From positions 186,001 through 250,000 of the IMG/VR virus record IMGVR_UViG_3300020178_000002: a stretch of DNA of 64,000 nucleotides. One strand, given 5' to 3'. Below the pieces are notes generated by a model. The model had not been told where the DNA came from. It searched no databases and worked only from the letters and a program-made list of their open reading frames with translations. Made by a program: the position numbers and the translations under genes. Below are positions 1 to 64,000 of the stretch, in pieces. How positions within the stretch are numbered: the first letter of the stretch is position 1; every line of letters begins with the position of its first letter.

Positions 1-267
1 CAGGCACAGATAGCCCTGTCACATGATTCTTCTAGGACTACAAAACAATCTTACATAAACCCAGAAGTCATTCTTCACTTCTTAAGCACGGCAAACTTGA
101 AAGGGTCTTTAAAAGACACTATTCTAAAAGGAAAGACGAAACTACACTTTGATCCTCAAATGTTTTTAAGGCAGTCTCAAAGAGTAGCTTCGTCTTTTAA
201 ATTTTCTGGTGAAGTATCAGGGTTCACCCTACATAACATGGTAGAATTGTTAGAACACATTATTTAA
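1..267 (+). CDS. 5'-truncated CDS: C-terminus of a DNA topoisomerase IB / tyrosine-recombinase-superfamily protein
   Basis: Frame 1 is open from base 1 to TAA at 265-267 (not in the ORF track). It reads ...QIALSHDSSRTTKQSYINPEVILHFL..., like the TopIB catalytic segment (H/N...SYIHP), and also contains RVAS. Confidence 0.55.
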   Translation, partial: QAQIALSHDSSRTTKQSYINPEVILHFLSTANLKGSLKDTILKGKTKLHFDPQMFLRQSQRVASSFKFSGEVSGFTLHNMVELLEHII

Positions 268-277
268 GGGGTTTTTT

Positions 278-838
278 ATGAGTAATGACTTTGGTGGGGG
301 TAATGAAAGATCTCTCTATATTCCAATGAGTGAAATAGAGATGGAGTTTATCCATAGACTTGTAGAGGCAAAAGAAATCTATGTAGAGATACATGGCTGG
401 GGTCACATCAACCAACCAACTATTACCTTTGGAGATAAGAATCTTCATGTTGGTTTTAAGATGTTCTTTGACAGACCAAACTTTCCAATGCCTGTTTACT
501 TCTTTGATATGGAACTTAAGACTAGATCAAACATTACTCTTTTTAGGGAGAAGATGTCTGCCATGTATGGGGGAGAGCCTTTGAGTGTAATGGAGGGCTT
601 AGAGCTTGATATGGTCTGGGATATATCTATCAAATACATAGACCCTAAACTAATAAAAGCCTTGATGCCAAACACTTTAGGTTTAACAACAAGGCTTCAA
701 GATACTGCCACTCATGATATTACAGTGACAGGTAATATGTCTCTGAATCGAGACTTAAAAGAAAAGGCTTACCATTTAGATCAAATGGAAAAACTAATAA
801 AGGCCGATAACATGCGAAAGATAAAGACTAACTCTTAA
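278..838 (+). CDS. hypothetical protein (186 aa)
   Basis: ORF follows the upstream CDS with an AAGGGG RBS; no recognisable motif. Confidence 0.7.
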   Translation: MSNDFGGGNERSLYIPMSEIEMEFIHRLVEAKEIYVEIHGWGHINQPTITFGDKNLHVGFKMFFDRPNFPMPVYFFDMELKTRSNITLFREKMSAMYGGEPLSVMEGLELDMVWDISIKYIDPKLIKALMPNTLGLTTRLQDTATHDITVTGNMSLNRDLKEKAYHLDQMEKLIKADNMRKIKTNS

Positions 839-3087: not shown

Positions 3088-4737
3088 TTATAGTCTTAAG
3101 AACCTTTTCCATCCACCCATTGCTTTTTCAGAACCGACAACAAGAAGGGAGATCAGCCAAGCAACCAGCATCGCTTGATACTGACCTGCTGTGAGGTAAT
3201 CTTTAAAAGTAAATAAAGCAAACAGAGAACCTAGTGTGCTGTGGTCAAAGAACATGAAAACTGTTTTAACCAAAAGCTTTGCTTTACTCGCACTTAGTTT
3301 TAATAGGCGAACCATTGTTTTTACAAATGTAGCTTCTGCTTTTTCATAATCTAAAGGGGTCTCTCCTATAATCCTTTGTAATCTCCCCCCATGAAAGAAC
3401 ATCCATTCATCAATAGTAAAGATCAAATCCTTGTAGTAGTTCTCTGGGCTTGTTTTAACTTCTTCCGCTTTAGCTTTCTTCTTTGCCCATGTCATCAAAC
3501 TATTCAAAGTATATTTTCTGCCGTTCTCATTTCGAATTGTAATATTTGATTTTAGTTTTTTACAGGCAGTGAATCTCACAAGCGTTAAGTTGTACCTTTC
3601 CAGATCTTTAGCTAGAGCTTCTTCTGCTTTGTCGAAAGCAATATCTTTCCAATAGTCAAGTTTAGTTTCTAATCCCTTTCTCATCTTTTCTTTATCTGCA
3701 GCAGGGATTTCTTTTTTCTCAAGCTTCTTAAGAAGTTCCATAAGGTAATCAGATTTATTAAAGAGAGCAGAGATTGTAGCATTGTTCAATAAAGATGCTT
3801 CTCTTACATTTGAAGGTATTGGCATTGGGTTGAACTTTGAAGCTAATTCAACCATCTCCCTATCTTCATGGACTAACCTTTGCCTATACCAATCACCACC
3901 CATAGTAATGAGAGCATAATTGGTTCTATCAAGATTTCTTTCTAACTTAGCTAAGTTCTTTGGCAGGGCTTGTAAGTTATCACCGATGTGCTTATAGACT
4001 TCTTCCCTCAAAGGAGATTTCTCTAGTGAGCTAAGAAGCTGGTTGACAGTTAATCTGATAATGTGTGCTTCAACCCTAGCTTGAGAGACACCACTTGATA
4101 AGATTGACCAGCTAGCTTGGCTTGAACCAACTCTCTTAAGTCTTTGTAAATCACTTTGGGCAGACTCCCAGAAAAGGTTCGGAGCTTCCATTGTCTTGAA
4201 AAAAAGAAAAAAGAATCCAGACCCGAAGATCTTTAAGCCAATCTTTAATAGGAGAGCACCTACTTTCCCATACCTCTTAAGCTTGTTTTTCACATATCGA
4301 ATCTCTGACCCTTTCTGTGGGTATTTAGGTTCTTCACCTAAGAGAGACTGCAAAAAGCTACCATGCTTAATCATCCATGCGTCAAAAATATCATAGAGAT
4401 CCTCAGCCCACTCTTTTGCATCTTCATCATTTCCAGGTGCAGAGAAGTTAGTTTCATGTCTATATAAGAATGTTTGTATTGAAAATACTTCACCAGTTAA
4501 GAAGGGAAAGTCACTCTGATCCGCATAGGGTACAAAGAAAGGCTTTTTTAGCCTTAGCTTTATATTCCAGAGCAAGCTCTTTTTCAGATCAAAACTAACT
4601 AAATCTATACCTAAGGGCTTTAACGCTTTCTTCAAATCTTCCTTAGCAATTTGGATTTCAGAAGCTTTCAACTTCTTCATTTCTTCTAGTATCTTCTTTG
4701 CTTTCTCGATTTCAGTGTTCATAATAACTCCTACCAC
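3088..4737 (-). CDS. hypothetical protein with C-terminal hydrophobic helices (549 aa), probable virion protein
   Basis: Long ORF with hydrophobic segments near the C-terminus and an internal REAS motif. Confidence 0.7.
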   Translation of the reverse strand: MVGVIMNTEIEKAKKILEEMKKLKASEIQIAKEDLKKALKPLGIDLVSFDLKKSLLWNIKLRLKKPFFVPYADQSDFPFLTGEVFSIQTFLYRHETNFSAPGNDEDAKEWAEDLYDIFDAWMIKHGSFLQSLLGEEPKYPQKGSEIRYVKNKLKRYGKVGALLLKIGLKIFGSGFFFLFFKTMEAPNLFWESAQSDLQRLKRVGSSQASWSILSSGVSQARVEAHIIRLTVNQLLSSLEKSPLREEVYKHIGDNLQALPKNLAKLERNLDRTNYALITMGGDWYRQRLVHEDREMVELASKFNPMPIPSNVREASLLNNATISALFNKSDYLMELLKKLEKKEIPAADKEKMRKGLETKLDYWKDIAFDKAEEALAKDLERYNLTLVRFTACKKLKSNITIRNENGRKYTLNSLMTWAKKKAKAEEVKTSPENYYKDLIFTIDEWMFFHGGRLQRIIGETPLDYEKAEATFVKTMVRLLKLSASKAKLLVKTVFMFFDHSTLGSLFALFTFKDYLTAGQYQAMLVAWLISLLVVGSEKAMGGWKRFLRL

Positions 4738-5465
4738 TTAATCTTGAACTTGATTTTTATTTGAGTGTCTTCACTGACGACACTTTCGGGAGGTCGAGTA
4801 TCGAAGTTATAGTTCAGCTCATTTACTACTGAAAATACCTTATTGATCTTGAACTCAATAGACCCTGTAGTCAGTATTCTGTAGTCTGAAAAGTTGTTAA
4901 ACAAAGGCTGATAATAGGTGATAATCTGACCTTTGATGTGATCATCCCAACTTTTTCCAATCTTCAAATAAGAAGTCCCTCTCGGGTTTAAAGATTTTTT
5001 ATTTGAACCTTTAATCTTCTCATAATCAGACATTCCCCCTATGCCCACAGCTATTAATTCTTTCAAGAAAGTAAATCTTAAACCACAACCTGTGAGCTGT
5101 CTCAAAGTAAGGAGTTTAAAATCATCTTTCTGGAATTGAGTGAATACCTCTGTTCCTAAATTACTCCACCACATTGCTGTCCATCTTAAGTGAGAATAAG
5201 ACTCGTTTTGAAAGGTACTCTCTTGGTTTTCACCATGAGAAGTAGAGCCTATAATCAAACCATGATGGATATCTCCTACAAAGTCTAACCTAAGACCTGC
5301 TTGGTATTGAAAGACACTTACGTTCCCTCTTTGAAGGAAGAGACTAGATTCCACAGACCCATGAGATCCTTTAGGTTTAGAACCTCGATCACTTTCAATA
5401 TTAACGACCTGCCCATAAGAATATAAAGGCAGAGAAAGTAAGATAGACAGCAACAAGTTTCTCAT
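4731..5465 (-). CDS. outer-membrane beta-barrel protein, DUF481/YdiY-like
   Basis: Signal peptide MRNLLLSILLSLPLYSYG-Q, alternating beta-strand pattern, C-terminal beta-signal ending IKIKFKIKW. Confidence 0.7.
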   Translation of the reverse strand: MRNLLLSILLSLPLYSYGQVVNIESDRGSKPKGSHGSVESSLFLQRGNVSVFQYQAGLRLDFVGDIHHGLIIGSTSHGENQESTFQNESYSHLRWTAMWWSNLGTEVFTQFQKDDFKLLTLRQLTGCGLRFTFLKELIAVGIGGMSDYEKIKGSNKKSLNPRGTSYLKIGKSWDDHIKGQIITYYQPLFNNFSDYRILTTGSIEFKINKVFSVVNELNYNFDTRPPESVVSEDTQIKIKFKIKW

Positions 5466-5953
5466 AGCAAATCTACTTCAACTACAGGAGGGTGGTTTTC
5501 TAAAAGTAGCTTTGCAAAAGGACATCTTTTTCTTTTAGCATAGGCTTTCAAAAAAGGAAGATGTTCTCTATCTCTTGTGTGTAAAGAGTGTGCAATCTCT
5601 CCAGCATATAAAATGAGGTCTGAAATTGACTTGTGACAAGCTTTTACACAAGAAGGTTTATATCCCATAGGTCCTTTCAAAACCCTAACAGGGGCTTTAT
5701 TTATGAGACATTGACCAGAGAGTGCTTTTGCAGCAGGACATCTACTAACATTCCCTCTCATGGCAAGATAAGAACCAGATTCTTGGTGCTTATTCTCTAG
5801 AGACCTAGACATAGACTCAGTTTTCTTCTGCAACTTGCGTATTGCAGATTCGACATCTCTTTGCACAGCTTTACTAAAACCAAACATTCCAGAGGCTGCT
5901 TGCTTTTCCATGTGTAGAGAGGCAACTCTTTGAATACGATTCATTATAGCCAC
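5462..5953 (-). CDS. hypothetical protein with RVASL...EKQAA leader
   Basis: 163 aa ORF coupled to both neighbours; Cys-containing internal repeat (RCPAAKAL / RCPFAKLL). Confidence 0.7.
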   Translation of the reverse strand: MAIMNRIQRVASLHMEKQAASGMFGFSKAVQRDVESAIRKLQKKTESMSRSLENKHQESGSYLAMRGNVSRCPAAKALSGQCLINKAPVRVLKGPMGYKPSCVKACHKSISDLILYAGEIAHSLHTRDREHLPFLKAYAKRKRCPFAKLLLENHPPVVEVDLL

Positions 5954-6897
5954 CTTGCTTTCTTTTTTTTAACAAAGCGACCTTTGGCCATACCATCTTG
6001 AAGATTATGCTCCTGGATGTTCTGATTTAATCTGGCTGGGTTGAGTTTGCCTTTATTATATGCACCCTCATAGTAAGCCATTTCAGGATGTTTCTCTAAG
6101 TGATCTTCCCATTCTTTTTTAGTCCACTTACGACCAGCCATTCTTTCCTCTTCTTCTGAAAAGAGGTCGAATGCAGACTTGTGCTTTTCTTTAACATCTT
6201 TATACTTTTCAGTATTGGCATCAAAGATTTCTGCGTCTTCTGGATTTTCCTCTTTCCACTTTAACCACTCTTTTCTTCCTTTAGGACCTTCATGGAAGCG
6301 ATTGGTCTTGTAGAACTCAGAAAAGTGTTCATCAGCAAAGCGATGTGACCCTTCATGGAAACCATCTTCGTGGTGATGATGGTGATCATGATGGTGGTCG
6401 TGATGGTCATCATGATGGTGTGTTTTATGAGTATCTCTATACCCAAAGTATCTCGCAACATCAGTAAGAGCAGCGTGTGCGTGAGAGATTTTGTCTTCTA
6501 CCCAATCATCTAAGTGGGGAGAATCTTCCATCATCTCCATCAACATATCAAGTTGGTCATGCATCTCCCTAAGATTTTGCCTACTCATGTAAGAGTGGTC
6601 ATGCTCATCATGTCCAGCATATTTCGAAAGATCACTATCTTCTGCCCAGAAGTGATCTTCGCCATCATATAAAAGGTAAGATGCATTTTTCTTGTTAATG
6701 CCCTCAACTAAACAAGAGCTGTCACCATAGCTAACAACATCTCCTTCAGAAAAAGCCATTCTTGAGGGGAGTGTGCTGTCCTCATAGTCTTCTTCTAAGT
6801 AATCATCTTCAATCAGCTCATCCTCAGCGAGGAAGTCAGCAGCTCTTTTATCGTGAAAGTATTCTCTTTCAATTTGGTCAAAAATATCATCTCTCAT
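5944..6897 (-). CDS. acidic, His-rich putative virion polyprotein
   Basis: AAGGAG RBS; poly-His/Asp tract HHHDDHHDHHHDHHHHH; six [KR]-x-A sites (KRA, RMA, KYA, RFA, KSA, RMA). Confidence 0.75.
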   Translation of the reverse strand: MRDDIFDQIEREYFHDKRAADFLAEDELIEDDYLEEDYEDSTLPSRMAFSEGDVVSYGDSSCLVEGINKKNASYLLYDGEDHFWAEDSDLSKYAGHDEHDHSYMSRQNLREMHDQLDMLMEMMEDSPHLDDWVEDKISHAHAALTDVARYFGYRDTHKTHHHDDHHDHHHDHHHHHEDGFHEGSHRFADEHFSEFYKTNRFHEGPKGRKEWLKWKEENPEDAEIFDANTEKYKDVKEKHKSAFDLFSEEEERMAGRKWTKKEWEDHLEKHPEMAYYEGAYNKGKLNPARLNQNIQEHNLQDGMAKGRFVKKKKARWL

Positions 6898-6947: not shown

Positions 6948-6948
6948 A

Positions 6949-7300: not shown

Positions 7301-7519
7301 TTAAAGACCCATCTCTACTTCCATGATCATACATTCTATTCTTCTGATCTCTTCATCTATCAAGCCTAATTTAAGGGTTTCCATGATATGCTGTTTGTTT
7401 GGTCTCTTATTCGAACCAATCATCTCATAGTATTCCTTATACAGGTTAAAAAGTTTAACTGCTTTAGATTGGGCATTGATGTATCTTGAACATACTTTCT
7501 TAGCTAGTTTATTTACCAT
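7301..7519 (-). CDS. hypothetical protein with KLAKKVCSRY leader
   Basis: Track ORF 7301..7552; the ATG at 7519 follows an AAGGAA RBS and is the likelier start. Confidence 0.6.
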   Translation of the reverse strand: MVNKLAKKVCSRYINAQSKAVKLFNLYKEYYEMIGSNKRPNKQHIMETLKLGLIDEEIRRIECMIMEVEMGL

Positions 7520-7520
7520 T

Positions 7521-7937
7521 TTAAAATTCCTTATCAAAAATAGGTCGGACATTAGGTCTGGGGTATTTTAGTTTGATCTCTGCCTTCACAGGAAGGTAGT
7601 CTCCTACAGAGAGTTTATCGAAAAGAAGGTATGCCCTGTTATATTCTTCGTAAAACCATTTTTGGATTTTCTTTTTCCCTCTGACTTCACTTACAACAAC
7701 AGACACAAGTGTTTCATCATCATGTATAAAATAAACGAATCCCCCAGCCTCTCCTCTTTTGACACCATTTATAAGAGGCTCTATTAAACCCACTGTTTTG
7801 AAATCAAGCATAAGACCATCCCAATTTTTAGATTGGGGTTTTTTTGCCAAAGCTCTCGCCTTGTCTTTAGCCCTACTATTTGATTGTCTCTCAAGACTAG
7901 CAACTCTAATTTCGAGATTCTTTAATATTTCTCTCAT
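7521..7937 (-). CDS. hypothetical protein with LEIRVASLERQS leader
   Basis: 138 aa; start coupled to the upstream gene's stop. Confidence 0.7.
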   Translation of the reverse strand: MREILKNLEIRVASLERQSNSRAKDKARALAKKPQSKNWDGLMLDFKTVGLIEPLINGVKRGEAGGFVYFIHDDETLVSVVVSEVRGKKKIQKWFYEEYNRAYLLFDKLSVGDYLPVKAEIKLKYPRPNVRPIFDKEF

Positions 7938-9103: not shown

Positions 9104-9958
9104 TCAAGACGCTATTGTCTTGCTGAAAGCTTCTTTAATCATCTCAATAAAAAAAGAGATATAGTCCACCCACCAAAAATAATGGTCTACTCCCCATAGT
9201 TTTCGAGCACTTGGGTTGCTTAGGAATGGATACACCAATGCAATCATATATATAAGGTTTATGACAGCAAGTCTCTGCATAACCCACCACAGGTGTTCTT
9301 TTAACTTCCTATCTCTCATCCTGCTTTTAATTTTTCTTGGGCCACCTATCCTCTTTACTTTTTCAGAAGATGGGGGAGGCTGTAAAGACTCAATAGTTTT
9401 TCCCACAGCGTATACCTCTTGTGGTTCTCTTACACCCTTAAACCTATACAAGCCAACACAAACATACCTTGTTCCTTTAGGAAGAATTCCATTGATACGC
9501 TTTCTTAAATTAATAACGGCTTCTTTTGTTAAAAGAATCTGCTTTGCTTGACATAAGCTCATAGTACGAGCAGCTATGTTTTTTGATAAGCCTTCCAACT
9601 CCACTCTTTTAGCACCAGCACCTACAAACAGGTCATCTTGTTTAACTTCAACAATCTTTCCCCAGTGGATACCTATTCTACTGTTAAGATTCAATTTGGC
9701 AGGTATCATATCTTGATATGCCAGAGCGAAATTTACAGCATCTATAGTCCTCTCAAAAGAAAGTAGAAAGCCATCAGACCTATCAATCTCTCTTCCTTGA
9801 TACTTATAAACTAGAGATCTTGTCATTCGGTCATGTACTTGAAACCATTGAGCAGCGACATGAGCACCATTTTTTTGAACAAAAGCAGTAGACCCTATTA
9901 TATCTAACAAGACTATAGCTAAATATCTTTCTTTCATGTCTACTGTAATAGGTCTCAT
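9104..9958 (-). CDS. class III nucleotide (adenylate/guanylate-type) cyclase with C-terminal TM helix
   Basis: LLDIIGST (first metal Asp), RSDGFLLSF (second Asp), RIGIHWG, GLSKNIAAR (Asn/Arg), YRFKGV. Confidence 0.85.
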   Translation of the reverse strand: MRPITVDMKERYLAIVLLDIIGSTAFVQKNGAHVAAQWFQVHDRMTRSLVYKYQGREIDRSDGFLLSFERTIDAVNFALAYQDMIPAKLNLNSRIGIHWGKIVEVKQDDLFVGAGAKRVELEGLSKNIAARTMSLCQAKQILLTKEAVINLRKRINGILPKGTRYVCVGLYRFKGVREPQEVYAVGKTIESLQPPPSSEKVKRIGGPRKIKSRMRDRKLKEHLWWVMQRLAVINLIYMIALVYPFLSNPSARKLWGVDHYFWWVDYISFFIEMIKEAFSKTIAS

Positions 9959-12071: not shown

Positions 12072-12089
12072 AATTTATTCTCCTTTATA

Positions 12090-12797: not shown

Positions 12798-12808
12798 ATT
12801 AATTCTCC

Positions 12809-27300: not shown

Positions 27301-27961
27301 AGTAAATAAACTCACCATCCTCCATTGCATTAGGAAGAGTGTCTACAAGAATTTCAATCACTTTTTGTTTAAATCCTGTACTCATTCTTGATGGAAGGTC
27401 TGGGTCTTTTCTTTTTCTCAGGTTAAATGTCCAAACCCTAAGAAGCTCTTCAGCGTACCACTTTTTCTGGTCTAAAGAAGTAATAGGTTTTCTTCTTAAT
27501 ATTCTATCAAGGCTTTCAAGACCTCCCTTGTCAAGAATCAATTGAGCAACTTCTTGAGGGGTCTTCTTAACTACAGGTACTTTAGGAGCTTTTCGTATCC
27601 TACCCTTAGTTATCTTAACTTTGCCTGATTTCTTGAAATACGTTAAAGTTGCCTTGAAAGTTGGCTTGAAGACGGTTTTGCTGAAAACAAAAACAACCTT
27701 TACCTGAGTTGGCTTGTTAAGTGCTTCTAAGATATCATAATGACTGACATTCAACATATTTGCGTATGTGTGGAGAAGCGTTCCCTCTATATCTTCAACA
27801 ACATCTAAATAAACTGTGTCTACGACACCTGGCTGATCAACAATCCATTGTGCAATGTCCTCGAGAGTAGCTTTCTCCATAGGAAGCTGAAACCCTGATT
27901 TCTTCTCAAGGCTAGATGTTCTGGTTTCTAATTCTGCTATTTTTTCTTGTATTGTTTTCAT
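27293..27961 (-). CDS. hypothetical protein with KIAELETRTSSLEKKS leader
   Basis: AAGGAG RBS; promoter-like motif upstream. Confidence 0.7.
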   Translation of the reverse strand: MKTIQEKIAELETRTSSLEKKSGFQLPMEKATLEDIAQWIVDQPGVVDTVYLDVVEDIEGTLLHTYANMLNVSHYDILEALNKPTQVKVVFVFSKTVFKPTFKATLTYFKKSGKVKITKGRIRKAPKVPVVKKTPQEVAQLILDKGGLESLDRILRRKPITSLDQKKWYAEELLRVWTFNLRKRKDPDLPSRMSTGFKQKVIEILVDTLPNAMEDGEFIYSK

Positions 27962-39807: not shown

Positions 39808-40434
39808 TTAGATCTTTGTAAGAAGAAGCCTCTCAAAGTGGAGTCTGTCTCCTCTGTTTAGTTTCTGCTCAAGCAGGTTCTTTATCTGCTTCTCAGTCAG
39901 AGCTTCTTGATTCTCTATCTTTCTTAAATTCTTTGCTTTAGAGAAGTCGCAGTTGTCGAATCGACCAGAGATAAGCCTAACACCTGTGAAGTCTGTCATC
40001 CAGAATGTAGTGTTCCTGAAAACACAACTTGCAAAGATACTGTTCTTTAGAGAGCCTTTAGAGTAATGAACACCTATGAACTGACATTGGAGAAAGTCAC
40101 AGTTAATGAAATAGTTGTCTTTAAAACGCTGGCTTATGAACTTTACTTTTTCAAAGCTCTTGCCATCAATTTTCAGTCCTATATTTTCTTCTGCTTCATA
40201 TTCTTTATTTGAGAATGAATCAGTAAGAGCTATTTCTTGTTTCTTTTCTAATTTAGACAAGGCTGCATCGAATTCTTCTTTAGTAATCTTACCTCCCATG
40301 TAGATTTTATTTAGAAATTTATACTCTCTATAAAAAACCTTATCCATTTCTTTTTCCAATTGGTTGAATGGGATTGAAGATGCTTTTTCAAGTCTGGCGA
40401 TTCTGATCTCAAGGGATTGTATTTTATCTTTCAT
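39808..40434 (-). CDS. pentapeptide-repeat protein with LEIRIARLEK leader
   Basis: Pentads FINCD FLQCQ FIGVH...FASCV FRNTT; C-terminus nearly identical to the next gene's. Confidence 0.8.
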   Translation of the reverse strand: MKDKIQSLEIRIARLEKASSIPFNQLEKEMDKVFYREYKFLNKIYMGGKITKEEFDAALSKLEKKQEIALTDSFSNKEYEAEENIGLKIDGKSFEKVKFISQRFKDNYFINCDFLQCQFIGVHYSKGSLKNSIFASCVFRNTTFWMTDFTGVRLISGRFDNCDFSKAKNLRKIENQEALTEKQIKNLLEQKLNRGDRLHFERLLLTKI

Positions 40435-41127: not shown

Positions 41128-41184
41128 TTCTATCTCTTTCTTTAAGTTGGTTTTGTCTACATAGAGTGTGTGTATATAAATAAT

Positions 41185-41225
41185 AAAAAAAAGGGCTGAC
41201 CCCAAACAAATGGAAGCCAGCCCTT
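41185..41225 (-). terminator. intrinsic terminator
   Basis: AAGGGCTG...CAGCCCTT stem followed by a U-tract on the minus strand, after the 41271 gene. Confidence 0.65.
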
Positions 41226-42611: not shown

Positions 42612-42612
42612 G

Positions 42613-43167
42613 TTAGCTTCCAGACTTGCCCATGAACCAGCCAACAATAAATGTCACTAAACTCATCCAGAAAGCAGTTCCAATTGAGACATCAAAGAAA
42701 GCTTCTTTGTTTTGAGAACCTAGCTTCTTAATACCTGTCACATTAAGCACCCATACAACAATAGAACCTACAAGAAGGCAAGCAACAATAAGAATCTCTG
42801 GGTTTAAAATAAACTCCATCAAGTCAAAGCTTACACGATTCATTGAAGCCATTCTTCTCTGAGCGTTATTTCTCTCTTCAAGAATAAACTTAACTTGCTT
42901 TACAGGATTAGAACCTACTTCCTTACGAAGTGCAGCTAAAGCTTTTTTAAACTCAGGTGTCTTTGAAACACGACCATACTCTTTTGCAACTCTTTTTGGA
43001 CCGCCTGCTTTCTTGAAAACTTGACCTACTTTACTTTGAACACCTTTGAAAGCTTGAAGGCCTTCTGAAACCTGTTGTCTCATTTCATCAAGAATGGCTT
43101 GCTTTTCAAGTTGAGCAACTCTGTTCTCAAGAATTGCAATTTTCTCTGATGCCGTTAAATGTCTCAT
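42613..43167 (-). CDS. membrane-anchored protein with LTASEKIAILE leader (paralog A)
   Basis: MRHLTASEKIAILENRVAQLEKQA; shares the GSNPV.Q..(F/Y)IL core with paralog B; two C-terminal TM helices. Confidence 0.75.
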   Translation of the reverse strand: MRHLTASEKIAILENRVAQLEKQAILDEMRQQVSEGLQAFKGVQSKVGQVFKKAGGPKRVAKEYGRVSKTPEFKKALAALRKEVGSNPVKQVKFILEERNNAQRRMASMNRVSFDLMEFILNPEILIVACLLVGSIVVWVLNVTGIKKLGSQNKEAFFDVSIGTAFWMSLVTFIVGWFMGKSGS

Positions 43168-45907: not shown

Positions 45908-46282
45908 CTAGCCATTCCATTCAAAATTAAAGAATGGGCTATGGAACATCCCTTTAACTTTCCATTCCAGAAGCCAGCTTTCGTCAAGCCTATCTGAATA
46001 TATTTTTATAGGCTCTTTGTTTTTAATAGCTCTAGCAAACTCATTTTTCTTGACATAGAGCTTCTCATTCTTAGTGACCCTAGTAGGTACACCCGTGCCT
46101 CCTAATGGTCTTAGAAGCAAGTTTGTTGTATTTGGGAAATAAACCCCATCCCCCATATTTTTTCTAAGGAATGTTCTAATGTGCTTGTACCTGAAGTACG
46201 CTTTGTTTTTATTCCCACCAAAGAAAAAAGCTTGCTTCTCTAATCTGGCAATACGACTTTCAAGGTTTGCGATGCTGTCCAT
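45908..46282 (-). CDS. hypothetical protein with LESRIARLEKQA leader
   Basis: GAGGAG RBS before ATG 46282. Confidence 0.7.
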   Translation of the reverse strand: MDSIANLESRIARLEKQAFFFGGNKNKAYFRYKHIRTFLRKNMGDGVYFPNTTNLLLRPLGGTGVPTRVTKNEKLYVKKNEFARAIKNKEPIKIYSDRLDESWLLEWKVKGMFHSPFFNFEWNG

Positions 46283-46330
46283 GATCTCTCCTCTTCTTTT
46301 ATTCAATAAGGAGATGCCATAAAGAGGTTA

Positions 46331-54677: not shown

Positions 54678-54715
54678 ATGAAGCCCACAAGGTTATAGTG
54701 GGCGAAGGATATGAA

Positions 54716-57452: not shown

Positions 57453-57863
57453 ATGATAGAAGTAGAATACCAACATGACCAATATGCTAGCATTCCTCAA
57501 CCACCTAGCAAGTCTAAAAAGATGAGTAAGGCTCAACTTATTAAGTTGATCAATGAATACTCAAATAGAGCAGATGAGCTAGCAGAACAGCTTGAATCAA
57601 AAGACCCTCTTTATGAGAGGAGAGATTCAGCTAACTACTCAAACTTCAAAGTAGCTAAAGTACTACATAAGATGAACTTTGAGGATAAACCTAATGCAGC
57701 ATACCCCCCAAGAATCTGGGTAGACATCTATGTTTATTCACTAGAAAATGGTGGTGAAACCTTTTTCCGAAGTTCGATAATCATAAATGCAAAGGATTTC
57801 TTGTTCCACACAGGAGCAAGAACCTTAAGCAACAAGATCAGAGCACTTAAGGGCTTACTTTAG
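57453..57863 (+). CDS. hypothetical protein (136 aa)
   Basis: AAGGA RBS. Confidence 0.65.
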   Translation: MIEVEYQHDQYASIPQPPSKSKKMSKAQLIKLINEYSNRADELAEQLESKDPLYERRDSANYSNFKVAKVLHKMNFEDKPNAAYPPRIWVDIYVYSLENGGETFFRSSIIINAKDFLFHTGARTLSNKIRALKGLL

Positions 57864-59527
57864 AACCTGCCACCCTCTTCAGCAGGCTTGCTGTATTTGA
57901 GAGATAGATTCTTAGCTATTGTTTCAATAACTTCAGTGTTCTCAGCAAGCATACGACCAGCTTCACCATAGATACCTCTAAGTACCTCGTTAAACTGAGA
58001 ATCGTTAAGAGTCCACATGTCTCTTTCCAACTTAGCTTTGGTAGAGATGGGGTCTACATTAAGAAGCTCTAAGATAACATCAATGTCCAAAGAACCTTTT
58101 TGGTAAAGGTTGAACAGAGCATCAAATGTATCTTGGTTGTCTCGAAGCCCAAGGCGAGTAAAGCTAAGGGTTGGGTGTAGAACTATCTCTTCCCCATCTT
58201 CATCTTCTTCGATGAAGCCCATACGCTTACACATAGGCTTTAGGATATTTTCCTCTACCATTTCTTGGAGGACTTCTCTCATAAGCATATAACGTGTATT
58301 GATGACTTCAAGATTGATTCTATCTCCAGAATAGCTTGACTCTCCAGATAGAAGAGACTCTGTGACACCAAGACCAGCATACATTTGTCGGTCTGTCATA
58401 TCATACTCACCAGAGAGTTCAAGCAGACGAGAATCAGCACCCATCTCTTCCCAAGAAACTTGGAAGTTGGCAATGATTGAGTAGTCTGGGTCTTGGAGAG
58501 CAATGTCTACTTGTTCTCTCAATGCTTCAACATCAGCAGCATCCATATCCTCTGCATAGACAAGTCGAATAGGTGTCATGTGTCTTGAAGCGATAGAGGT
58601 TTGTGCCTGTCTGAGTTTGTCTCTGTAAACCAAGATCCTTAAACAACGCTCAAGCATTGAGTGTCCTCTGGGTTCATATTGAGATTTCTTACGAGCCATG
58701 TAGTAAACAAAAGACCCTTGATCTGGATCTGTGTTTAGTCTGATGTTTCTACCTTCTCTAATTGCTTCTACAACATCTTCAGGCATTGACTCTACAACCC
58801 TTAATGCAGAGGGGTCTTGTAAAGTTGCTCTTTCTACAATGTCTTTAGTCTTACTGTCAGGTATAAGCTCTATAATTTTTTCACTTGTGAAAGGAAAGCT
58901 TTCCATATGAACTTGCTCTGGAGGTAGGACTCTTAGACCTGTCCAGCCTTTGTAGTTCTTCTTGAGCCATCTGTAAGCTCTAACATTTGAATCCGAGTAT
59001 TCTTCCCACTCTGTTGCAGCACTGCCATCTTCCCTAAGTACATTTCGTTCTTTATGTGTAACAGACTTAGGCATATCAGGGTTATTATCTTCACAGAACA
59101 CAAAAACTTCACCTAAGAGATTGTATTCATGGAGGATTTCTATGAGTCTGTGCAAGAGACCTGTTCTTTTAGCCCACTTCTCACAGAATCTGAGTGCTTC
59201 ATTGGCCATTTCATGGTTTCTAGCTTTTGGTAATCCAAGTCTGATTTTACTAAGAGGCAATTCAGTGTGCAGGTCAACAGCTTGACCAACAAAGGGGTCT
59301 GTTCTATAGAAGAATCTAAAATAGTTTCTTTGCTCATCTTGGCTTTGGGGTAGTTCTAAAAAGTCGGTAGACAATTCAGGACTGTAGAAGTTTCCCCCAG
59401 AGCCCATCATAGTTCCATTTGTAGTCATAGCAACTTTGACTCTGGACTTCATATCTTTGAGATCAAACTTTCTAGTGGTTGCTTTTGATCTTGATTGAAC
59501 TTTCCCAATAATATCTTCCTCACTCAT
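57860..59527 (-). CDS. probable phage portal protein
   Basis: 555 aa helical protein with DPFV..AVDLH.ELP, L.P..V, ..RG.S.L..C and PIRL segments reminiscent of large-phage portals. Confidence 0.55.
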   Translation of the reverse strand: MSEEDIIGKVQSRSKATTRKFDLKDMKSRVKVAMTTNGTMMGSGGNFYSPELSTDFLELPQSQDEQRNYFRFFYRTDPFVGQAVDLHTELPLSKIRLGLPKARNHEMANEALRFCEKWAKRTGLLHRLIEILHEYNLLGEVFVFCEDNNPDMPKSVTHKERNVLREDGSAATEWEEYSDSNVRAYRWLKKNYKGWTGLRVLPPEQVHMESFPFTSEKIIELIPDSKTKDIVERATLQDPSALRVVESMPEDVVEAIREGRNIRLNTDPDQGSFVYYMARKKSQYEPRGHSMLERCLRILVYRDKLRQAQTSIASRHMTPIRLVYAEDMDAADVEALREQVDIALQDPDYSIIANFQVSWEEMGADSRLLELSGEYDMTDRQMYAGLGVTESLLSGESSYSGDRINLEVINTRYMLMREVLQEMVEENILKPMCKRMGFIEEDEDGEEIVLHPTLSFTRLGLRDNQDTFDALFNLYQKGSLDIDVILELLNVDPISTKAKLERDMWTLNDSQFNEVLRGIYGEAGRMLAENTEVIETIAKNLSLKYSKPAEEGGRF

Positions 59528-60927: not shown

Positions 60928-61915
60928 GATCAAAAGTTTAGAATGGGATATTCAAAATCTTAGCTTGGATAATTCCAGAGTCCAAAAGATTACAATGGCT
61001 CTTTCTTCTTTGAATAACTTAGTCCAGAATAAAGTTTCGGAAGCGGACACAGATTCAGGGGACTTAGAGAAAGACGATAGACAGAGGTCTAGCACATTCA
61101 ATGGTATGTCTGCTAAAGAGTGGGTTCTCAATAGCAGGAATGTCTGGTCTGATGTCTTTCAACCACCAAGAACAAAAGAAGAAGCAGAACATGGAGCAAC
61201 TTACCCTAAAAGCCTAACTGATAGGCTTATCTCCATGTATTCAAAAGAAGGCGATTTAGTTTTCGATCCTTTTTTGGGTACAGGTACTTCCTTAATGTCT
61301 GCCATATTTAAGAACAGAGATGCTGTTGGTATTGAACTTAACCCAGAGTTCTTTGAGTTTGCTCAAAAGAGAGTTAACTCAGAGTATTCAATGTTCAGCA
61401 CATGTGATGTAAAGCTATATAACGATAACTGTATGAACTTGGACAACTACTTAAAAGATGAGTCTGTTCAACTTACAGTGACTTCCCCACCTTACGCTGA
61501 CTTTATCCAGAAGTCTTTAGAGGACAGGGCTAAGGTACACAAGGACTCTATTATAAAGAACAAGAATAACTCATCGGTTCGTCAGTATTCTACATCGAAA
61601 GAAGACTTTGGGAACTTACCTTATGATGAGTTCTTAAAAGAGGCACAGGGTCTCCTAAGTCTTATCCTCAAGAAGACAAAGAGTGGAGGTTATGGTGCTT
61701 GGGTTGTTAAAGATTATAGAGACACGAAGAATGGCATTCCTTATGTAGACTTCCATTCTGACTTAGCTAAGGTTGGAGAGGCAGCAGGTTTTAAATACCA
61801 TGACCTTATTGTTTGGGATCAGAGTAATCAGAGAAGTCTTTTTCTACAGGGATACCCTAGTAAGTTTTACACAAACCAAAACTCTAGCTTCATCGTTGTC
61901 TTTAGGAAAGACTAG
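60902..61915 (+). CDS. amino (N4C/N6A) DNA methyltransferase, motif I before SPPY
   Basis: HGATYP..L..RLI..YS..GD.V.DPFLGTGT, followed by TSPPY. Confidence 0.88.
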   Translation: MTVEEIVFKIKSLEWDIQNLSLDNSRVQKITMALSSLNNLVQNKVSEADTDSGDLEKDDRQRSSTFNGMSAKEWVLNSRNVWSDVFQPPRTKEEAEHGATYPKSLTDRLISMYSKEGDLVFDPFLGTGTSLMSAIFKNRDAVGIELNPEFFEFAQKRVNSEYSMFSTCDVKLYNDNCMNLDNYLKDESVQLTVTSPPYADFIQKSLEDRAKVHKDSIIKNKNNSSVRQYSTSKEDFGNLPYDEFLKEAQGLLSLILKKTKSGGYGAWVVKDYRDTKNGIPYVDFHSDLAKVGEAAGFKYHDLIVWDQSNQRSLFLQGYPSKFYTNQNSSFIVVFRKD

Positions 61916-61966
61916 TTTCTGTTTTGTAGTTTTTTAATGGTCTGCCTTAAAACACAGGAGGTAGTT

Positions 61967-64000
61967 ATGTCCAAAAAAGCTGTCAAAAGAGATGACCCTA
62001 AAAAAAAGAACACAGGTGAAGGTGGTCTTGATACATGGTTTGCAGGGCATGGTGGTGGTAAACCTGATGAAAGAGCAACATGGGGTGATTGGGTTTCTAT
62101 AACTCCTGTTAAGAAAACAATAACTAAAGAAGATGGATCTAAGAAGACATATGAACCAGGTGACATTGTTGGCCCATGTGGGATATCTAGTGACCCAGAG
62201 TGGTCATCCATTACAGAGAATGGAAAAAAGCCCCTCAAATGTATGCCAAGAGAAAAAGCTCATGATATGGCAAAAAAAGACAGAGCAGAACTCGCTAAGA
62301 ACAAGAAAAAACAAGAGAGTGGTGGAAAGAAGCCTACTAACACTCCTACCTTTTCTGAGGAAGCTAAAGAAGTTTTAGACAAGAAGTCTGCTCTAGGGAT
62401 TACTAGAAACTCTAGGGCTGTATCGAAGCTGAAAAAAGCTATCTTACACCTTTTAGCTTTCTATGCAGAAGATCAAGACAAGAAGATTACAGAGTTCTTG
62501 AGCCTTGTTTTGGATAAAGTCGAGTCTAGGCTTCAAAATCAGTTCAATATCAGAAGGTTTTCTTTAGAATCTGCTTCAATAAATAGGTATGACCCTTCTG
62601 CAACTAACATTTCCCTTTACTATGCGATAAATGGGGGGAGTTATAGGGTAGACCTGAACATAGGGTATTCAAACCAATACTCTAGATTTAATAGCAATGT
62701 TCCTTTGAGAAAGAGAATGGGTGTAGCTCTGTACTCCATAAAAAAGGTGGCAAGTAGTTCTATCTTAATCCCACCCCCACCCTCTGAAGAAGAACACCTC
62801 CGAGAGCTTTCTGAAGTATCGTATCAGTATGAAAATAGATATAATGCTCCAGAGTTGCAGGACGCTTTAGATTCAAGTTCAGAACATCTTTTTTCAAATC
62901 TCTTACTAGAACATGGTCATGTTGAGTCACCTGTTAACATCAAATCTATGATGGATGGGATTCTGGGAAGTATAGTTATTCATAAAAGCTTCTTCAATGT
63001 CTCAAGGCCTAATGTTCTAGCTAGCAAACATGGTATTCCATTTAAGTATGACTACTTAGAGTCTGCACAGACACCTAGCTACCCTAGTGGACACACAGCT
63101 CAGGCTTACTATGCTGCTCTCTTACTTGCTGATAAATACCCTCTCCTGAGAGAGGGTTTATTAAATATAGCCAGGATGGTTGAACAATCGAGAGTAGATA
63201 GAGGTGTCCATTACCCTTCAGACAACAAGGCAGGTAAACTACTCGCTACTGTTCTTTATGAGAATAAGAAGCTAGGAAAGAAAGCAGACTTCTTTAGAGA
63301 AGTATCTCCACCAGATTCTTTAACAAGTTTAAATCAAGGAAGTCATGGTAAGGATGAGAACCCCGATGGTGTAAATGACCACAGTTCTTTGCCTAATGGG
63401 GATTCAGCAAGGAATATAGGCAGACCTTCTCCAGATTCTCCTAATCTGAAGTATAAAGATCTTCACAATCAACCTAGACCTACAAATGTTATAGACAGAG
63501 GGTATGTGAATAACAGTGGTAGTGGTTCAGCGAGGGTCATACCTCAGTCTTTAAAACAAGCTGGTTCTCAACCTGCACAAGATTTAGCTGGTGTGAAGAC
63601 ATGGGTGACTAAGACCAGACAAGATCAAATAAATAATGACACTAACCCCGAAAAGACAAGAGCAGATTATGAAGACGGTAAGCCTCAGAGAGACAGAGTT
63701 CTACCTTTACCTAGTGGACACCCAGAGGGGAGAACGGAAGACAGGGCAGCACCGAAAGGATTTAATACTGTGCCCGATTCTAGTGGTCAGGGTGGACAGA
63801 ATAGACCACCGAAAGATCCAAGTGCATTAAAAGACCAACCAGAGGGTAAAGCACTACACGAAAGACCTCGATCTAGTGCTGTTCCAGGAGAGAACTATGG
63901 ACATCCTTATATAGATCAGTCTACTTCTACGGGTCTTAAACGCAGAATTGTGGGAAATACTGAATTCTGGGATGTTGAAGATGGTGAGGTTGTGGCTGGT
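61967..64000 (+). CDS. 3'-truncated multidomain protein: DUF5872-like N-terminus, PAP2 acid-phosphatase domain, low-complexity tail
   Basis: Open from ATG 61967 (AGGAGG RBS) to the window end, 678 codons, absent from the track. PAP2 motifs K-x6-RP (KSFFNVSRP), PSGH and SR-x5-H-x3-D (SRVDRGVHYPSD) at about 62984-63223. Confidence 0.85.
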   Translation, partial: MSKKAVKRDDPKKKNTGEGGLDTWFAGHGGGKPDERATWGDWVSITPVKKTITKEDGSKKTYEPGDIVGPCGISSDPEWSSITENGKKPLKCMPREKAHDMAKKDRAELAKNKKKQESGGKKPTNTPTFSEEAKEVLDKKSALGITRNSRAVSKLKKAILHLLAFYAEDQDKKITEFLSLVLDKVESRLQNQFNIRRFSLESASINRYDPSATNISLYYAINGGSYRVDLNIGYSNQYSRFNSNVPLRKRMGVALYSIKKVASSSILIPPPPSEEEHLRELSEVSYQYENRYNAPELQDALDSSSEHLFSNLLLEHGHVESPVNIKSMMDGILGSIVIHKSFFNVSRPNVLASKHGIPFKYDYLESAQTPSYPSGHTAQAYYAALLLADKYPLLREGLLNIARMVEQSRVDRGVHYPSDNKAGKLLATVLYENKKLGKKADFFREVSPPDSLTSLNQGSHGKDENPDGVNDHSSLPNGDSARNIGRPSPDSPNLKYKDLHNQPRPTNVIDRGYVNNSGSGSARVIPQSLKQAGSQPAQDLAGVKTWVTKTRQDQINNDTNPEKTRADYEDGKPQRDRVLPLPSGHPEGRTEDRAAPKGFNTVPDSSGQGGQNRPPKDPSALKDQPEGKALHERPRSSAVPGENYGHPYIDQSTSTGLKRRIVGNTEFWDVEDGEVVAG

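What the first reader, a model, noticed from the sequence alone, without database searches (positions are those of the whole stretch)
1..64000. Genome-wide [K/R]-x-A motif: candidate protease-processed, virion-packaged polyprotein system
Seen: unrelated proteins carry short [KR]-x-A (often followed by S/G/A/F/D) motifs at apparent domain junctions. Examples: the 5944 gene has six (KRAA, RMAF, KYAG, RFAD, KSAF, RMAG); the UvrD-like gene has RKAS, RFAS, KLAS, KTAS twice and KSAS; the C39 gene has RMAS, RLAG and KQAS; the 42613 gene has KQAI, RMAS and KEAF; the 61967 gene has KSAL, KVAS, KKAD and KQAG. They look much sparser in RecA, DnaX, ThyX and RNR, but I did not count. Established: T4 gp21 and phiKZ gp175 cut head-internal proteins at short motifs. 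Inference: a maturation protease cuts after [KR]-x-A, releasing enzymes (helicase, TopIB, phosphatase, peptidase) that are injected into the host.
Basis: partly seen in the sequence, partly recalled or inferred. Interest (0 to 1): 0.85.

Follow-up and report, generated by a model that had tools for sequence, protein, structure and literature searches.

The report
Shared leader and junction motif, jumbo phage
The loose three-residue motif is no commoner in this 312-kb uncultured phage than chance, but a sharper one (Arg/Lys, one residue, Ala, Ser) is genuinely over-represented in this phage group; it closes a 25-residue leader shared by many unrelated small proteins and sits at domain junctions, so it may be a protease or targeting code, which is untested.

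Summary
As defined, though, [KR]-x-A is at chance in the window (169 observed, 151 expected, z 1.7). It is not raised in the C39, PAP2 or portal genes, nor in most replication genes.

Three real signals lie underneath:
1. The four-residue form [RK]-x-A-S is enriched 2.2x in the window, and 2.6-3x in two sets of related jumbo-phage loci. It is not enriched in unrelated viral loci. It is position-specific: P3 R/K, P2 Q/V/T/M/N, P1 Ala only, P1' Ser only.
2. Seven window genes begin with one conserved leader, roughly M-R-R-S-A-S-E-I-I-x-x-L-E-x-R-I-A-R-L-E-K-Q-A. It is found in 1,153 protein clusters and in no cellular genome, and it ends in an invariant [KR]-Q-[AS].
3. The 5944 gene belongs to a family of modular proteins. 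Their modules are fused or split between genomes, always at [KR]-x-A. Relatives carry the junction ..I-I-D-D-I-G-L-G-R-M-A, with R-M-A 21x over expectation.

Best reading: a recognition and processing code like the T4 capsid-targeting sequence. Cleavage, the protease and virion packaging are all untested. The idea that the helicase and phosphatase are injected has no support.

The parts
7875..7937 (-). Type-A leader (first 21 residues) of the 138-aa ORF 7521-7937; contains R-V-A-S
   Evidence: Leader HMM hit, E 5e-10, directly after the start Met; aligned in A5
40372..40434 (-). Type-A leader of ORF 39808-40434. The body is a pentapeptide-repeat protein; its paralogue is 40477-41205
   Evidence: Pfam PF13599 E 9e-14; paralogy E 4e-40
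46211..46282 (-). Type-A leader of ORF 45908-46306, counted from the internal Met; ends ..L-E-K-Q-A
   Evidence: Best leader HMM hit in the window, E 4e-11
43096..43167 (-). Type-A leader of ORF 42613-43167, which has C-terminal hydrophobic segments.
   Evidence: Homologous leaders with ..L-T-A-S-[EQ]-K-I-A.. occur in L077, L085 and L092
42537..42611 (-). Type-A leader of ORF 42144-42647, a paralogue of 42613
   Evidence: E 3e-9; paralogy E 3e-18
27893..27961 (-). Divergent type-A leader of the 222-aa ORF 27293-27961
   Evidence: E 6e-10
5891..5944 (-). Type-B leader (..R-V-A-S-L-H-M-E-K-Q-A-A-S) of ORF 5462-5953
   Evidence: The same element precedes the homologous module as an N-terminal leader in L125 and as an internal linker in L126 and L127. 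The module is fused behind R-M-A, R-T-A or K-R-S-A in P0138, P0148, P0160 and P0188
7460..7519 (-). Possible type-B leader (..K-L-A-K-K-V-C-S-R-Y-I..S-K-A) inside ORF 7301-7552, from an internal Met; tentative
   Evidence: By eye only: it resembles the N-terminus of the 5944 family..K-R-L-A-K-K-I-A-Q-K-H-M. No statistical test was run
5944..6897 (-). Modular acidic protein with a His-rich tract and 9 [KR]-x-A sites; the flagship of the finding
   Evidence: 9 against 2.8 expected. 67 homologues; R-M-A 61 against 2.9 expected; junction ..I-I-D-D-[IM]-G-L-x-R-M-A. AF2 puts 7 of 9 sites in linkers with pLDDT below 50
5462..5953 (-). Cys-containing module that starts S-G-[LMN]-[FY]-G-[FY]. It is a separate gene here and is fused to the 5944-type protein in other phages
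4731..5465 (-). DUF481 outer-membrane-type protein whose N-terminus looks like a signal peptide (by eye); a syntenic member of the block
   Evidence: Pfam PF04338 E 4e-10; the same order 5944-like, 5462-like, DUF481 in L125, L126 and L127
34248..35831 (-). C39/C71-like cysteine peptidase (residues 1-175) followed by variable modules. The domain ends ..R-Q-I-M-A-S, the inserted module ends ..S-R-L-A-G, and K-Q-A-S comes later. Candidate processing enzyme
   Evidence: PF13529 E 1.6e-4, below the curated cut-off. Profile against PDB hits PeiR endoisopeptidase, E 0.0014, with Cys and His aligned. Q14, Q17, C20 and H103 are invariant. The gene sits next to or near the modular protein in L125, L127 and L128
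22314..22781 (-). PF18894 putative phage metallopeptidase; second candidate protease
   Evidence: Pfam E 1.8e-16; conserved near the block in L125, L126 and L127
15998..19123 (+). UvrD-like helicase with six [KR]-x-A-S sites. Only R-F-A-S (residue 473) is invariant; the site at 648 lies between the conserved GD..Q and N-[FY]-R-S blocks, where I place SF1 motif III from memory
57860..59527 (-). Portal protein. It shows the window is from a tailed phage and has no motif excess
   Evidence: phrog_16240 E 1e-33; [KR]-x-A 4 against 3.9
61967..64000 (+). Open frame that runs off the window, with a PAP2 phosphatase domain; motif count at expectation
   Evidence: PF01569 E 9e-11; 7 against 6.1

Best explanation
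The window comes from a 312-kb uncultured jumbo phage. In its clade, a short and position-specific peptide code, [RK]-[Q/V/T/M/N/hydrophobic]-Ala-Ser, marks where protein modules begin. It appears in three settings.

(a) It closes a conserved leader of about 25 residues, an amphipathic helix, on many unrelated small proteins. There are seven in this window and at least 10-12 per related genome. The leader ends L-E-[KR]-Q-[AS], followed by a small residue.

(b) It occurs in a second, basic leader or linker type (..R-V-A-S-x-[HY]-M-x-K-x-A). This type stands either at the N-terminus of a stand-alone module or between modules of a fused protein.

(c) It forms the junction of the 5944-type modular proteins (..I-I-D-D-I-G-L-G-R-M-A).

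I infer that the leader is a recognition and targeting element, functionally like the T4 capsid-targeting sequence. I also infer that a phage-encoded protease cuts at or next to [RK]-x-Ala|Ser, releasing modules and removing leaders.

Shown: the motif, its specificity, its restriction to the clade, its place at module boundaries, and the fusion and fission of modules.

Inferred: cleavage, the cut position, which protease acts (an unseen prohead protease, the C39/C71-like peptidase at 34248-35831, or the PF18894 metallopeptidase at 22314-22781), and virion packaging.
For: Enrichment:
- [KR]-x-A-S is 28 against 12.5 in the window, with order controls flat.
- It is 76 against 25.6 and 163 against 62 in relatives, and 148 against 140 in unrelated viral loci.
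- Specificity: R 3.1x and K 2.0x at P3, Ala only at P1, Ser only at P1', Q 6x at P2, Asp 0.35x.

Leader:
- Exactly seven hits in the six-frame window, all at ORF starts.
- 1,153 clusters at 50% identity; in nearly all of the 150 listed the leader starts at residue 1.
- After L-E the next residues are [KR] in 144 of 147, Q in 121 of 147 and [AS] in 144 of 147; after one small residue conservation stops.
- The Q preferred at P2 across the proteome matches the leader end.

Module boundaries and fusions:
- The 5462-type module is always preceded by [KR]-x-A, whether it is a separate gene or fused.
- Leaders also occur internally, and up to three per ORF.
- R-M-A is 21x over expectation in 67 homologues of 5944.
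- 7 of 9 sites in the 5944 protein fall in low-confidence linkers.
- The C39-like domain ends in ..M-A-S in all four relatives, and an inserted module in the window copy ends ..R-L-A-G.

Context:
- The C39-like gene is adjacent to, or one gene from, the motif-dense modular protein in L125, L127 and the distant 485-kb phage L128.
- Leader cargo includes pentapeptide-repeat and WGR domains.
- Precedent: T4 has 10-20-residue targeting propeptides that end at the protease motif, and giant phages keep conserved N-termini on diverged processed paralogues (PMC5694885).
Against: - There is no proteomic or biochemical evidence for cleavage or packaging, and no cultured relative.
- No T4-type or HK97-type prohead protease was seen in the window.
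- The C39-like assignment is weak (below the Pfam cut-off). Its best solved relative is a cell-wall endoisopeptidase, so it may be a lysin.
- In the window the C39-like gene lies 28 kb from the 5944 gene.
- Type-A leaders have no Gly-Gly.
- The excess also touches conserved enzymes such as RecA, ThyX and RNR, which a pure virion-protein code does not predict.
- Junction codons are very similar between copies, so shared descent or recombination could explain part of the signal.
- Two leader proteins have C-terminal hydrophobic segments.
- The related loci were found through the leader itself. Leaders were masked before counting, but unrecognised leader variants remain.
Confidence: 0.45

Rival explanations
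1. No cleavage. The leaders and junctions are docking or oligomerisation helices, and [RK]-x-A-S is simply how these helices start (Ser as helix N-cap). On this view one ancestral helix module spread by duplication, gene fusion and fission, and recombination, so the enrichment reflects shared descent.
For: - The leader has a heptad pattern, with I/L/I/L/A at the a and d positions.
- I-I-D-D-x-[GE] recurs 4-5 times per protein, including at the extreme C-terminus and inside a conserved domain, as a multivalent binding motif would.
- An 804-aa protein in L194 carries the motif at the start of each tandem repeat.
- Junction codons are largely identical between copies.
Against: - Unrelated viral proteomes show no such preference, so it is not a general helix rule.
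- The excess is spread over 152 of 562 ORFs, against 101 expected, including enzymes that are not paralogues.
- Conservation stops abruptly one residue after [AS].
- The mature start of a module is the same whatever precedes it.
Confidence: 0.3
2. A bacteriocin-like leader system. The C39-like cysteine peptidase recognises the amphipathic leader and cuts after a pair of small residues (A-S-G, G-S-G or A-G-G), in the manner of double-glycine leaders. The cargo then acts at the cell envelope together with the DUF481 outer-membrane protein, not in the capsid.
For: - Conserved neighbourhood: C39-like gene, modular protein, 5462-type module, DUF481.
- Q/C/H are invariant.
- Type-B elements are followed by A-S-G, G-S-G or A-G-G.
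- In L128 the tail of the C39-like protein carries the Q-P-L-..-D-Y-G motif otherwise seen at the N-terminus of the 5944 family.
Against: - No ABC transporter is present.
- The Pfam score is under the cut-off.
- Type-A leaders end Q-[AS] with no Gly.
- The closest solved relative cuts pseudomurein, not leaders.
- In the window the peptidase gene is 28 kb away.
Confidence: 0.15
3. Chance and composition: the eye picked a common tripeptide in Lys- and Ala-containing proteins.
For: This is true of the motif as written. Window-wide z is 1.7, K-x-A is exactly at expectation, and four of the five suggested following residues are not enriched. Orthologues of the UvrD-like gene show no [KR]-x-A excess.
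Against: It cannot explain z 4.4, 9.8 and 12.9 for [KR]-x-A-S alongside flat order controls and a flat outgroup. It also cannot explain the 21x R-M-A excess or the 1,153-cluster leader.
Confidence: 0.05
4. A modification site: Ser in [RK]-x-A-S is phosphorylated or otherwise modified by a phage or host enzyme with a preference for basic residues.
For: Basic residues are enriched on both sides. The sites also occur in replication enzymes. The motif fits R-x-x-S.
Against: P1 must be Ala; other residues before Ser give about 1x. Thr is not enriched (1.2x). The tie to module boundaries and leader ends is left unexplained.
Confidence: 0.05

Closest known systems
T4 capsid-targeting sequences (CTS) and gp21 prohead-protease processing of internal and core proteins
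   Same: Several otherwise unrelated proteins of one phage share a short N-terminal amphipathic peptide that ends in a fixed tripeptide. An acidic multi-site protein resembles a core or scaffold protein that is cut many times (PMC5694885).
   Different: The leader is longer (about 25 residues against 10-20). It is far more numerous (at least 10-12 genes per genome and 1,153 clusters). It ends [KR]-Q-[AS] rather than [LI]-x-Glu. No gp21-like protease or virion data are in hand. Leaders also occur internally.
phiKZ / SPN3US giant-phage head-protein processing ([SAG]-x-Glu)
   Same: A jumbo phage with many candidate processed proteins; conserved N-termini on diverged paralogues.
   Different: [SAG]-x-E is not enriched here (0.95-0.98x). 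The propeptides are short. There is no detectable homology.
Herpesvirus assemblin and the related phage prohead proteases (cut between Ala and Ser; my own recollection, not tested here)
   Same: Ala at P1 and Ser at P1' with a defined P3. Prohead proteases of tailed phages share the assemblin fold.
   Different: P3 is basic here rather than aliphatic. No assemblin-like gene was identified in the window.
Double-glycine leader peptides cut by C39 peptidase domains
   Same: A 15-30-residue amphipathic N-terminal leader on diverse cargo, and a papain-like Cys/His peptidase encoded beside a substrate-like gene.
   Different: Type-A leaders have no Gly-Gly. The peptidase is not fused to an ABC transporter. 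The Pfam match is below threshold.
Polyvalent proteins of phages and conjugative elements (Iyer et al. 2017, PMC5512222)
   Same: Multi-module phage proteins proposed to be processed into units by an encoded peptidase and delivered with the DNA.
   Different: The modules here are small and mostly of unknown function. There is an explicit junction motif. The modules are often separate genes, each with its own leader. The characteristic zincin domain is not part of the same polypeptide.

Membership tests
T4-type CTS / prohead-protease substrates | Short N-terminal peptide shared by several unrelated proteins of one phage | tested here: met
   Seven ORFs in the window; multiple per locus in relatives
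T4-type CTS / prohead-protease substrates | The leader ends in the same motif that the protease cuts elsewhere in head proteins | tested here: inconclusive
   The leader end [KR]-Q-[AS] matches the proteome-wide motif and the module junctions, but no cleavage data exist
T4-type CTS / prohead-protease substrates | A gp21/HK97-type prohead protease is encoded near the portal, scaffold and capsid genes | tested here: not met
   None was found among the window ORFs scanned with Pfam or PHROGs. The portal at 57860-59527 has no protease neighbour. The other 248 kb of the genome were not examined
T4-type CTS / prohead-protease substrates | Mature proteins are present in virions without the leader | not testable with these tools
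   Uncultured phage; no proteome available
phiKZ-like processed head proteins | [SAG]-x-Glu cleavage motif | tested here: not met
   Ratio 0.98 and 0.95
Double-glycine leader / C39 peptidase system | Gly-Gly (or Gly-Ala, Gly-Ser) at positions -2 and -1 of the leader | tested here: not met
   Type-A leaders end Q-[AS]. Only type-B elements are followed by A-S-G, G-S-G or A-G-G
Double-glycine leader / C39 peptidase system | C39 peptidase domain with a Gln/Cys/His/Asp set | tested here: inconclusive
   PF13529 scores 22.7 bits against a cut-off of 24. Q14, Q17, C20, H103 and D109/D123 are invariant. The PDB profile hit is to the C71-type PeiR. The AF2 model was too poor to use
Double-glycine leader / C39 peptidase system | Peptidase fused to, or next to, an ABC exporter | tested here: not met
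   No ABC transporter in the window or in L125-L128
Polyvalent proteins (Iyer et al. 2017) | One polypeptide with 2-15 effector-type domains plus a processing peptidase domain | tested here: inconclusive
   The 5944 family is multi-modular and the C39-like protein carries extra modules. The modules have no assigned effector functions, and the PF18894 peptidase is a separate gene
Viral polyprotein | Modules separated by a recurrent, conserved junction sequence | tested here: met
   ..I-I-D-D-[IM]-G-L-x-R-M-A; R-M-A 61 against 2.9 expected. Internal leaders between modules
Viral polyprotein | The junctions are cleaved | not testable with these tools
   Needs mass spectrometry or expression

The most novel reading that the evidence does not exclude
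A clade of uncultured jumbo phages, absent from 185,579 cellular reference genomes, uses a dedicated and so far undescribed peptide code. A 25-residue leader found on more than 1,100 protein clusters, together with [RK]-x-Ala|Ser sites, would route tens of cargo proteins per genome into the capsid or another phage structure. A protease with assemblin-like Ala|Ser specificity would then release them. Modules would be freely fused, split and shuffled at these sites.
Probability: 0.35. Interest if true: 0.75.

Novelty: new variant of a known kind. Interest (0 to 1): 0.6.

Why it matters
If the leader is a targeting peptide and [RK]-x-Ala|Ser is its cut site, two things follow. First, it gives a sequence rule for predicting which of the many unknown genes of these jumbo phages encode packaged or processed proteins. 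Second, it gives a portable tag for loading foreign proteins, as the T4 targeting sequence has been used. It would also extend Ala|Ser specificity, known from herpesvirus assemblin, to a phage lineage. Even without cleavage, a leader shared by more than 1,100 protein clusters and missing from Pfam and PHROGs is an unannotated feature worth a family definition. For the scan itself the lesson is that the loose three-residue motif was not significant. The signal only appeared after the motif was sharpened and related genomes were added.

Tried and rejected
- DNA-level cause: rejected. The Ala and Ser codons vary with normal usage, and Ser uses both TCN and AGY.
- Local composition: rejected. Shuffling within 10- or 20-residue blocks gives the same expectation.
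- [ILM]-x-Glu (the T4 motif) looked enriched in the window, but it is equally enriched in unrelated viral loci (1.16x), so it is a generic property of proteins.
- Terminal bias of the sites: significant in the first set of relatives, but not in the window or in the larger set. Dropped.
- The junction HMM (I-I-D-D-x-G-L-x-R-M-A) found no strong copy in the window or in other loci. The window's 5944 protein has only degenerate versions.
- Near-identity and protein searches against cultured phages found nothing useful.
- Literature searches for the leader and junction strings found nothing relevant.
- NCBIfam gave no hits.
- The AF2 model of the C39-like domain was too poor for a fold search, so none was run.
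- A word-indexed search with one leader protein found only 6 proteins. The exhaustive profile search was needed.
- Codon comparison of the junctions could not separate protein-level selection from recent recombination.

Full report
WHAT THE WINDOW IS.
The 64-kb window is 93% coding, 38% G+C and has no tRNA genes. It is bases 186,001-250,000 of a 312,136-bp viral contig, IMGVR_UViG_3300020178_000002.

It encodes:
- a portal protein at 57860-59527 (phrog_16240, E 1e-33);
- SNF2 and UvrD-like helicases, RecA, a DnaX-type clamp loader and delta subunits, ThyX, and both RNR subunits, the large one with a LAGLIDADG insert;
- dNK, MazG and two DNA methyltransferases;
- a PAP2 phosphatase in the frame that runs off the right end;
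- a C39-like peptidase and a PF18894 metallopeptidase.

No cultured phage is similar at the DNA level. I found no TopIB among the ORFs I scanned.

THE OBSERVATION AS WRITTEN.
The motif as defined is not above chance:
- [KR]-x-A occurs 169 times against 150.9 expected from per-protein shuffles, z 1.66.
- K-x-A is 102 against 101. R-x-A is 73 against 54, ranking 11th of 400 gapped pairs.
- By class, it is at expectation in the C39-like gene (6/4.8), the 61967 frame (7/6.1), the portal (4/3.9), replication enzymes other than UvrD (49/44.7) and all remaining ORFs (66/71.3).
- It is raised only in the 5944 gene (9/2.8), the UvrD-like gene (15/8.6) and, weakly, a set of seven small genes described below.
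- RecA and RNR are not sparser than the 'tagged' genes.

So the motif is not genome-wide in that form.

THE REFINED MOTIF.
Adding Ser after Ala changes the picture.
- [KR]-x-A-S occurs 28 times against 12.5, z 4.4.
- The excess survives shuffling within 10- or 20-residue blocks.
- Seven permutations of the same residues stay between z -1.6 and 2.4.
- The Ala and Ser codons vary with normal usage, so the signal is in the protein.

It replicates outside the window:
- In 20 related loci: 76 against 25.6, z 9.8, with 51 of the sites outside recognised leaders.
- In an independent set of 68 related loci (562 ORFs, leaders masked): 163 against 62, z 12.9, again with flat order controls.
- In about 100 unrelated viral loci pulled out by the same first scan: 148 against 140.

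Pooling 819 clade proteins gives a sharp profile:

| Position | Enrichment |
|---|---|
| P3 | R 3.1x, K 2.0x, all other residues about 1x |
| P2 | Q 6.0x, V 5.1x, T, M and N about 4x, D 0.35x |
| P1 | Ala 2.5x, no other residue enriched |
| P1' | Ser 2.5x, Gly 1.06x, Ala 0.58x |

A SHARED N-TERMINAL LEADER.
An all-against-all comparison and inspection of the N-termini showed that seven minus-strand ORFs start with one motif: 7521, 27293, 39808, 42144, 42613, 45908 and, more distantly, 5462. An HMM built from it finds exactly these seven in the six-frame translation, each directly after a start Met; the next hit has E 0.27.

A degenerate DNA scan of IMG/VR returned many generic coiled coils. 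It also returned a clear family with the consensus M-R-R-[ST]-A-S-E-I-I-x-x-L-E-x-R-[IV]-A-R-L-E-[KR]-Q-[AS], usually several per locus.

A profile of 38 leaders, searched against 1.84 billion representative proteins, finds 1,153 clusters at E <= 0.001. In nearly all of the 150 listed the match begins at residue 1, in proteins of 43-396 residues.

After the second L-E the residues are:
- [KR] in 144 of 147;
- Q in 121 of 147;
- [AS] in 144 of 147;
- S, G or A in 85 of 147;
- after that, no conservation.

Other properties of the leader:
- A strict back-translated pattern has no match in 185,579 cellular genomes.
- The same pattern has 86 matching stretches in viral contigs, with at least 10-12 copies in single contigs of 173 and 206 kb.
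- Neither Pfam nor PHROGs covers the leader, and no paper contains the strings.
- Cargo is diverse: pentapeptide repeats (39808), proteins with C-terminal hydrophobic segments (42613 and 42144), a WGR domain, and mostly unknown proteins.

THE 5944 GENE AND ITS NEIGHBOURS.
The 5944 protein has 67 detectable homologues. They are modular proteins in which R-M-A occurs 61 times against 2.9 expected, and [KR]-x-A 421 times against 189.

The core is a junction, E-I-[IV]-D-D-[IM]-G-L-[GD]-R-M-A, that precedes different modules. The window copy keeps degenerate versions: S-R-M-A-F, S-K-Y-A-G, H-R-F-A-D and E-R-M-A-G.

The site at residue 92 is [KR]-x-A in 24 of 31 aligned homologues. In an AlphaFold model (mean pLDDT 62), 7 of the 9 sites lie in segments with pLDDT below 50, which make up 39% of the residues.

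The next gene, 5462, encodes a module starting S-G-[LMN]-[FY]-G-[FY]. What precedes that module in each case:

| Protein | Arrangement | Sequence before the module |
|---|---|---|
| Window 5462 | separate gene, own leader | ..R-V-A-S-L-H-M-E-K-Q-A-A |
| L125 homologue | separate gene, own leader | ..K-R-V-A-N-A-Y-M-N-K-T-A |
| P0138, P0148, P0160, P0188 | fused to the 5944-type protein | R-T-A-A-A, R-T-A-S-A, K-R-S-A, R-M-A-A |
| L126 and L127 homologues | same leader used internally as a linker, between two earlier modules | a further S-R-M-A-S-T-K-T-A directly before this module |

So 'leader' and 'junction' are the same kind of element. Modules are fused or split between genomes exactly at [KR]-x-A.

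Type-A leaders also occur internally:
- three in one 445-residue frame in L102;
- one at residue 96 in L125;
- two full units in P0194.

CANDIDATE PROTEASES.
The C39-like protein has invariant Q14, Q17, C20 and H103 across relatives down to 47% identity. A profile of it hits the solved endoisopeptidase PeiR with the Cys and His aligned, E 0.0014. Its Pfam score is just under the curated cut-off, and the structure model was unusable.

In all four relatives the peptidase domain ends ..G-R-Q-[IV]-[MV]-A-S, and variable modules follow. The window copy carries an inserted module that ends ..S-R-L-A-G.

Its gene lies one gene upstream of the modular protein in L125 (a 375-kb phage). It is directly upstream in L127. 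In the distant 485-kb phage LR745208.1 it overlaps the start of a 461-residue protein that has 18 [KR]-x-A sites against 9.1 expected, including K-T-A-A-S-G-L-Y-G. In the window it is 28 kb away.

A PF18894 metallopeptidase (22314-22781) is also conserved near the block. No prohead protease was seen in the window.

THE UVRD-LIKE GENE.
Across five orthologues (48-100% identity in the searched region, residues 240-700) only R-F-A-S at residue 473 is invariant. The site at 648 lies between the conserved GD..Q and N-[FY]-R-S blocks, where SF1 helicases have motif III by my recollection. K-S-A-S near the C-terminus is kept in 3 of 5. The other three sites are not conserved. The orthologues have no [KR]-x-A excess and only 2-4 [KR]-x-A-S sites. 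This argues against a helicase cut into pieces.

INTERPRETATION.
The data show a clade-specific, position-specific peptide signature tied to the starts of modules and the ends of leaders. I think the most likely mechanism is a targeting and recognition leader plus a proteolytic site, analogous to the T4 capsid-targeting sequences. Those are 10-20-residue propeptides ending at the protease motif. The comparison extends to the conserved N-termini of processed giant-phage paralogues (PMC5694885) and to the idea of processed polyvalent proteins (PMC5512222).

Ala|Ser specificity is known for herpesvirus assemblin, whose fold prohead proteases share. That point is my own recollection and was not tested.

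Cleavage, the exact cut position, the protease and the destination of the cargo are all inferences.

The main rival is that these are docking or oligomerisation helices spread by duplication and recombination, with no cleavage. The very similar junction codons, the repeat protein in L194 and the recurrence of I-I-D-D-x-[GE] at the extreme C-terminus fit that reading.

The claim that the helicase, phosphatase and peptidase are released for injection has no support.

CAVEATS.
- Genes were called as longest non-overlapping ORFs.
- The related loci were found through the leader. Leaders were masked before counting, and the outgroup came from the same scan, but unrecognised leader variants still contribute to the excess.
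- Only 64 of the 312 kb were examined.

Noticed in passing
window 54638-57391 (+): The ribonucleotide reductase large subunit carries an inserted LAGLIDADG domain, which suggests an intein or homing endonuclease. A separate homing-endonuclease-like ORF lies at 47584-48663.
   Followed up: no
window 39808-40434 and 40477-41205 (-): Two paralogous pentapeptide-repeat proteins, a fold known to mimic DNA. The first carries the type-A leader; the second appears to have only a degenerate one.
   Followed up: partly
window 5944-6897 (-), residues about 158-176: A long His/Asp tract in the acidic modular protein. Several homologues carry EF-hand domains instead, which suggests metal binding.
   Followed up: no
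window 4731-5465 (-): A phage-encoded DUF481 outer-membrane-type protein whose N-terminus looks like a signal peptide (judged by eye), conserved in synteny in L125, L126 and L127. This is unusual for a phage and hints at a Gram-negative host.
   Followed up: partly
window 9104-9958 (-): ORF with an adenylate/guanylate cyclase catalytic domain (PF00211, E 8e-6).
   Followed up: no
window 11400-13522 (-): Three tandem paralogues (223-237 aa, E 1e-24 to 1e-37 to each other) with no family match. A second paralogous pair lies at 38877-39769 (+).
   Followed up: no
window 23720-24815 (-): Adjacent ORFs with weak matches to sigma-70 region 4 and to NusG/KOW, possibly phage transcription factors.
   Followed up: no
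window 37259-38074 (+): ORF with a class II aminoacyl-tRNA-synthetase-like core (PF00152, E 9e-10), although the window has no tRNA genes.
   Followed up: no
window 61967-64000 (+), after about residue 440: The PAP2 phosphatase frame continues into a long region rich in Pro, Gly, Ser, Asn and Asp that looks low-complexity (by eye) and runs off the window.
   Followed up: no
L194 10631-13045 (-): An 804-aa protein in a related 227-kb phage with about five tandem repeats of roughly 90 aa. Each repeat starts with [KR]-x-A-[SR] followed by ..K-D-K-I-x-R-I-V-K-A-G.., and the protein ends in a Cys-rich region.
   Followed up: partly
L128 (LR745208.1 464446-484958) 9995-10618: In the distant 485-kb phage the C39-like protein ends with Q-P-L-M-T-R-R-D-Y-G. 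In other phages this motif opens the 5944-type modular proteins, which suggests an old fusion or exchange between the two genes.
   Followed up: partly
window-wide and control loci: [ILM]-x-Glu, the T4 protease motif, is about 1.1-1.3x over expectation in every set examined, including unrelated viral loci. It is a generic protein property and a trap for motif hunting by eye.
   Followed up: yes
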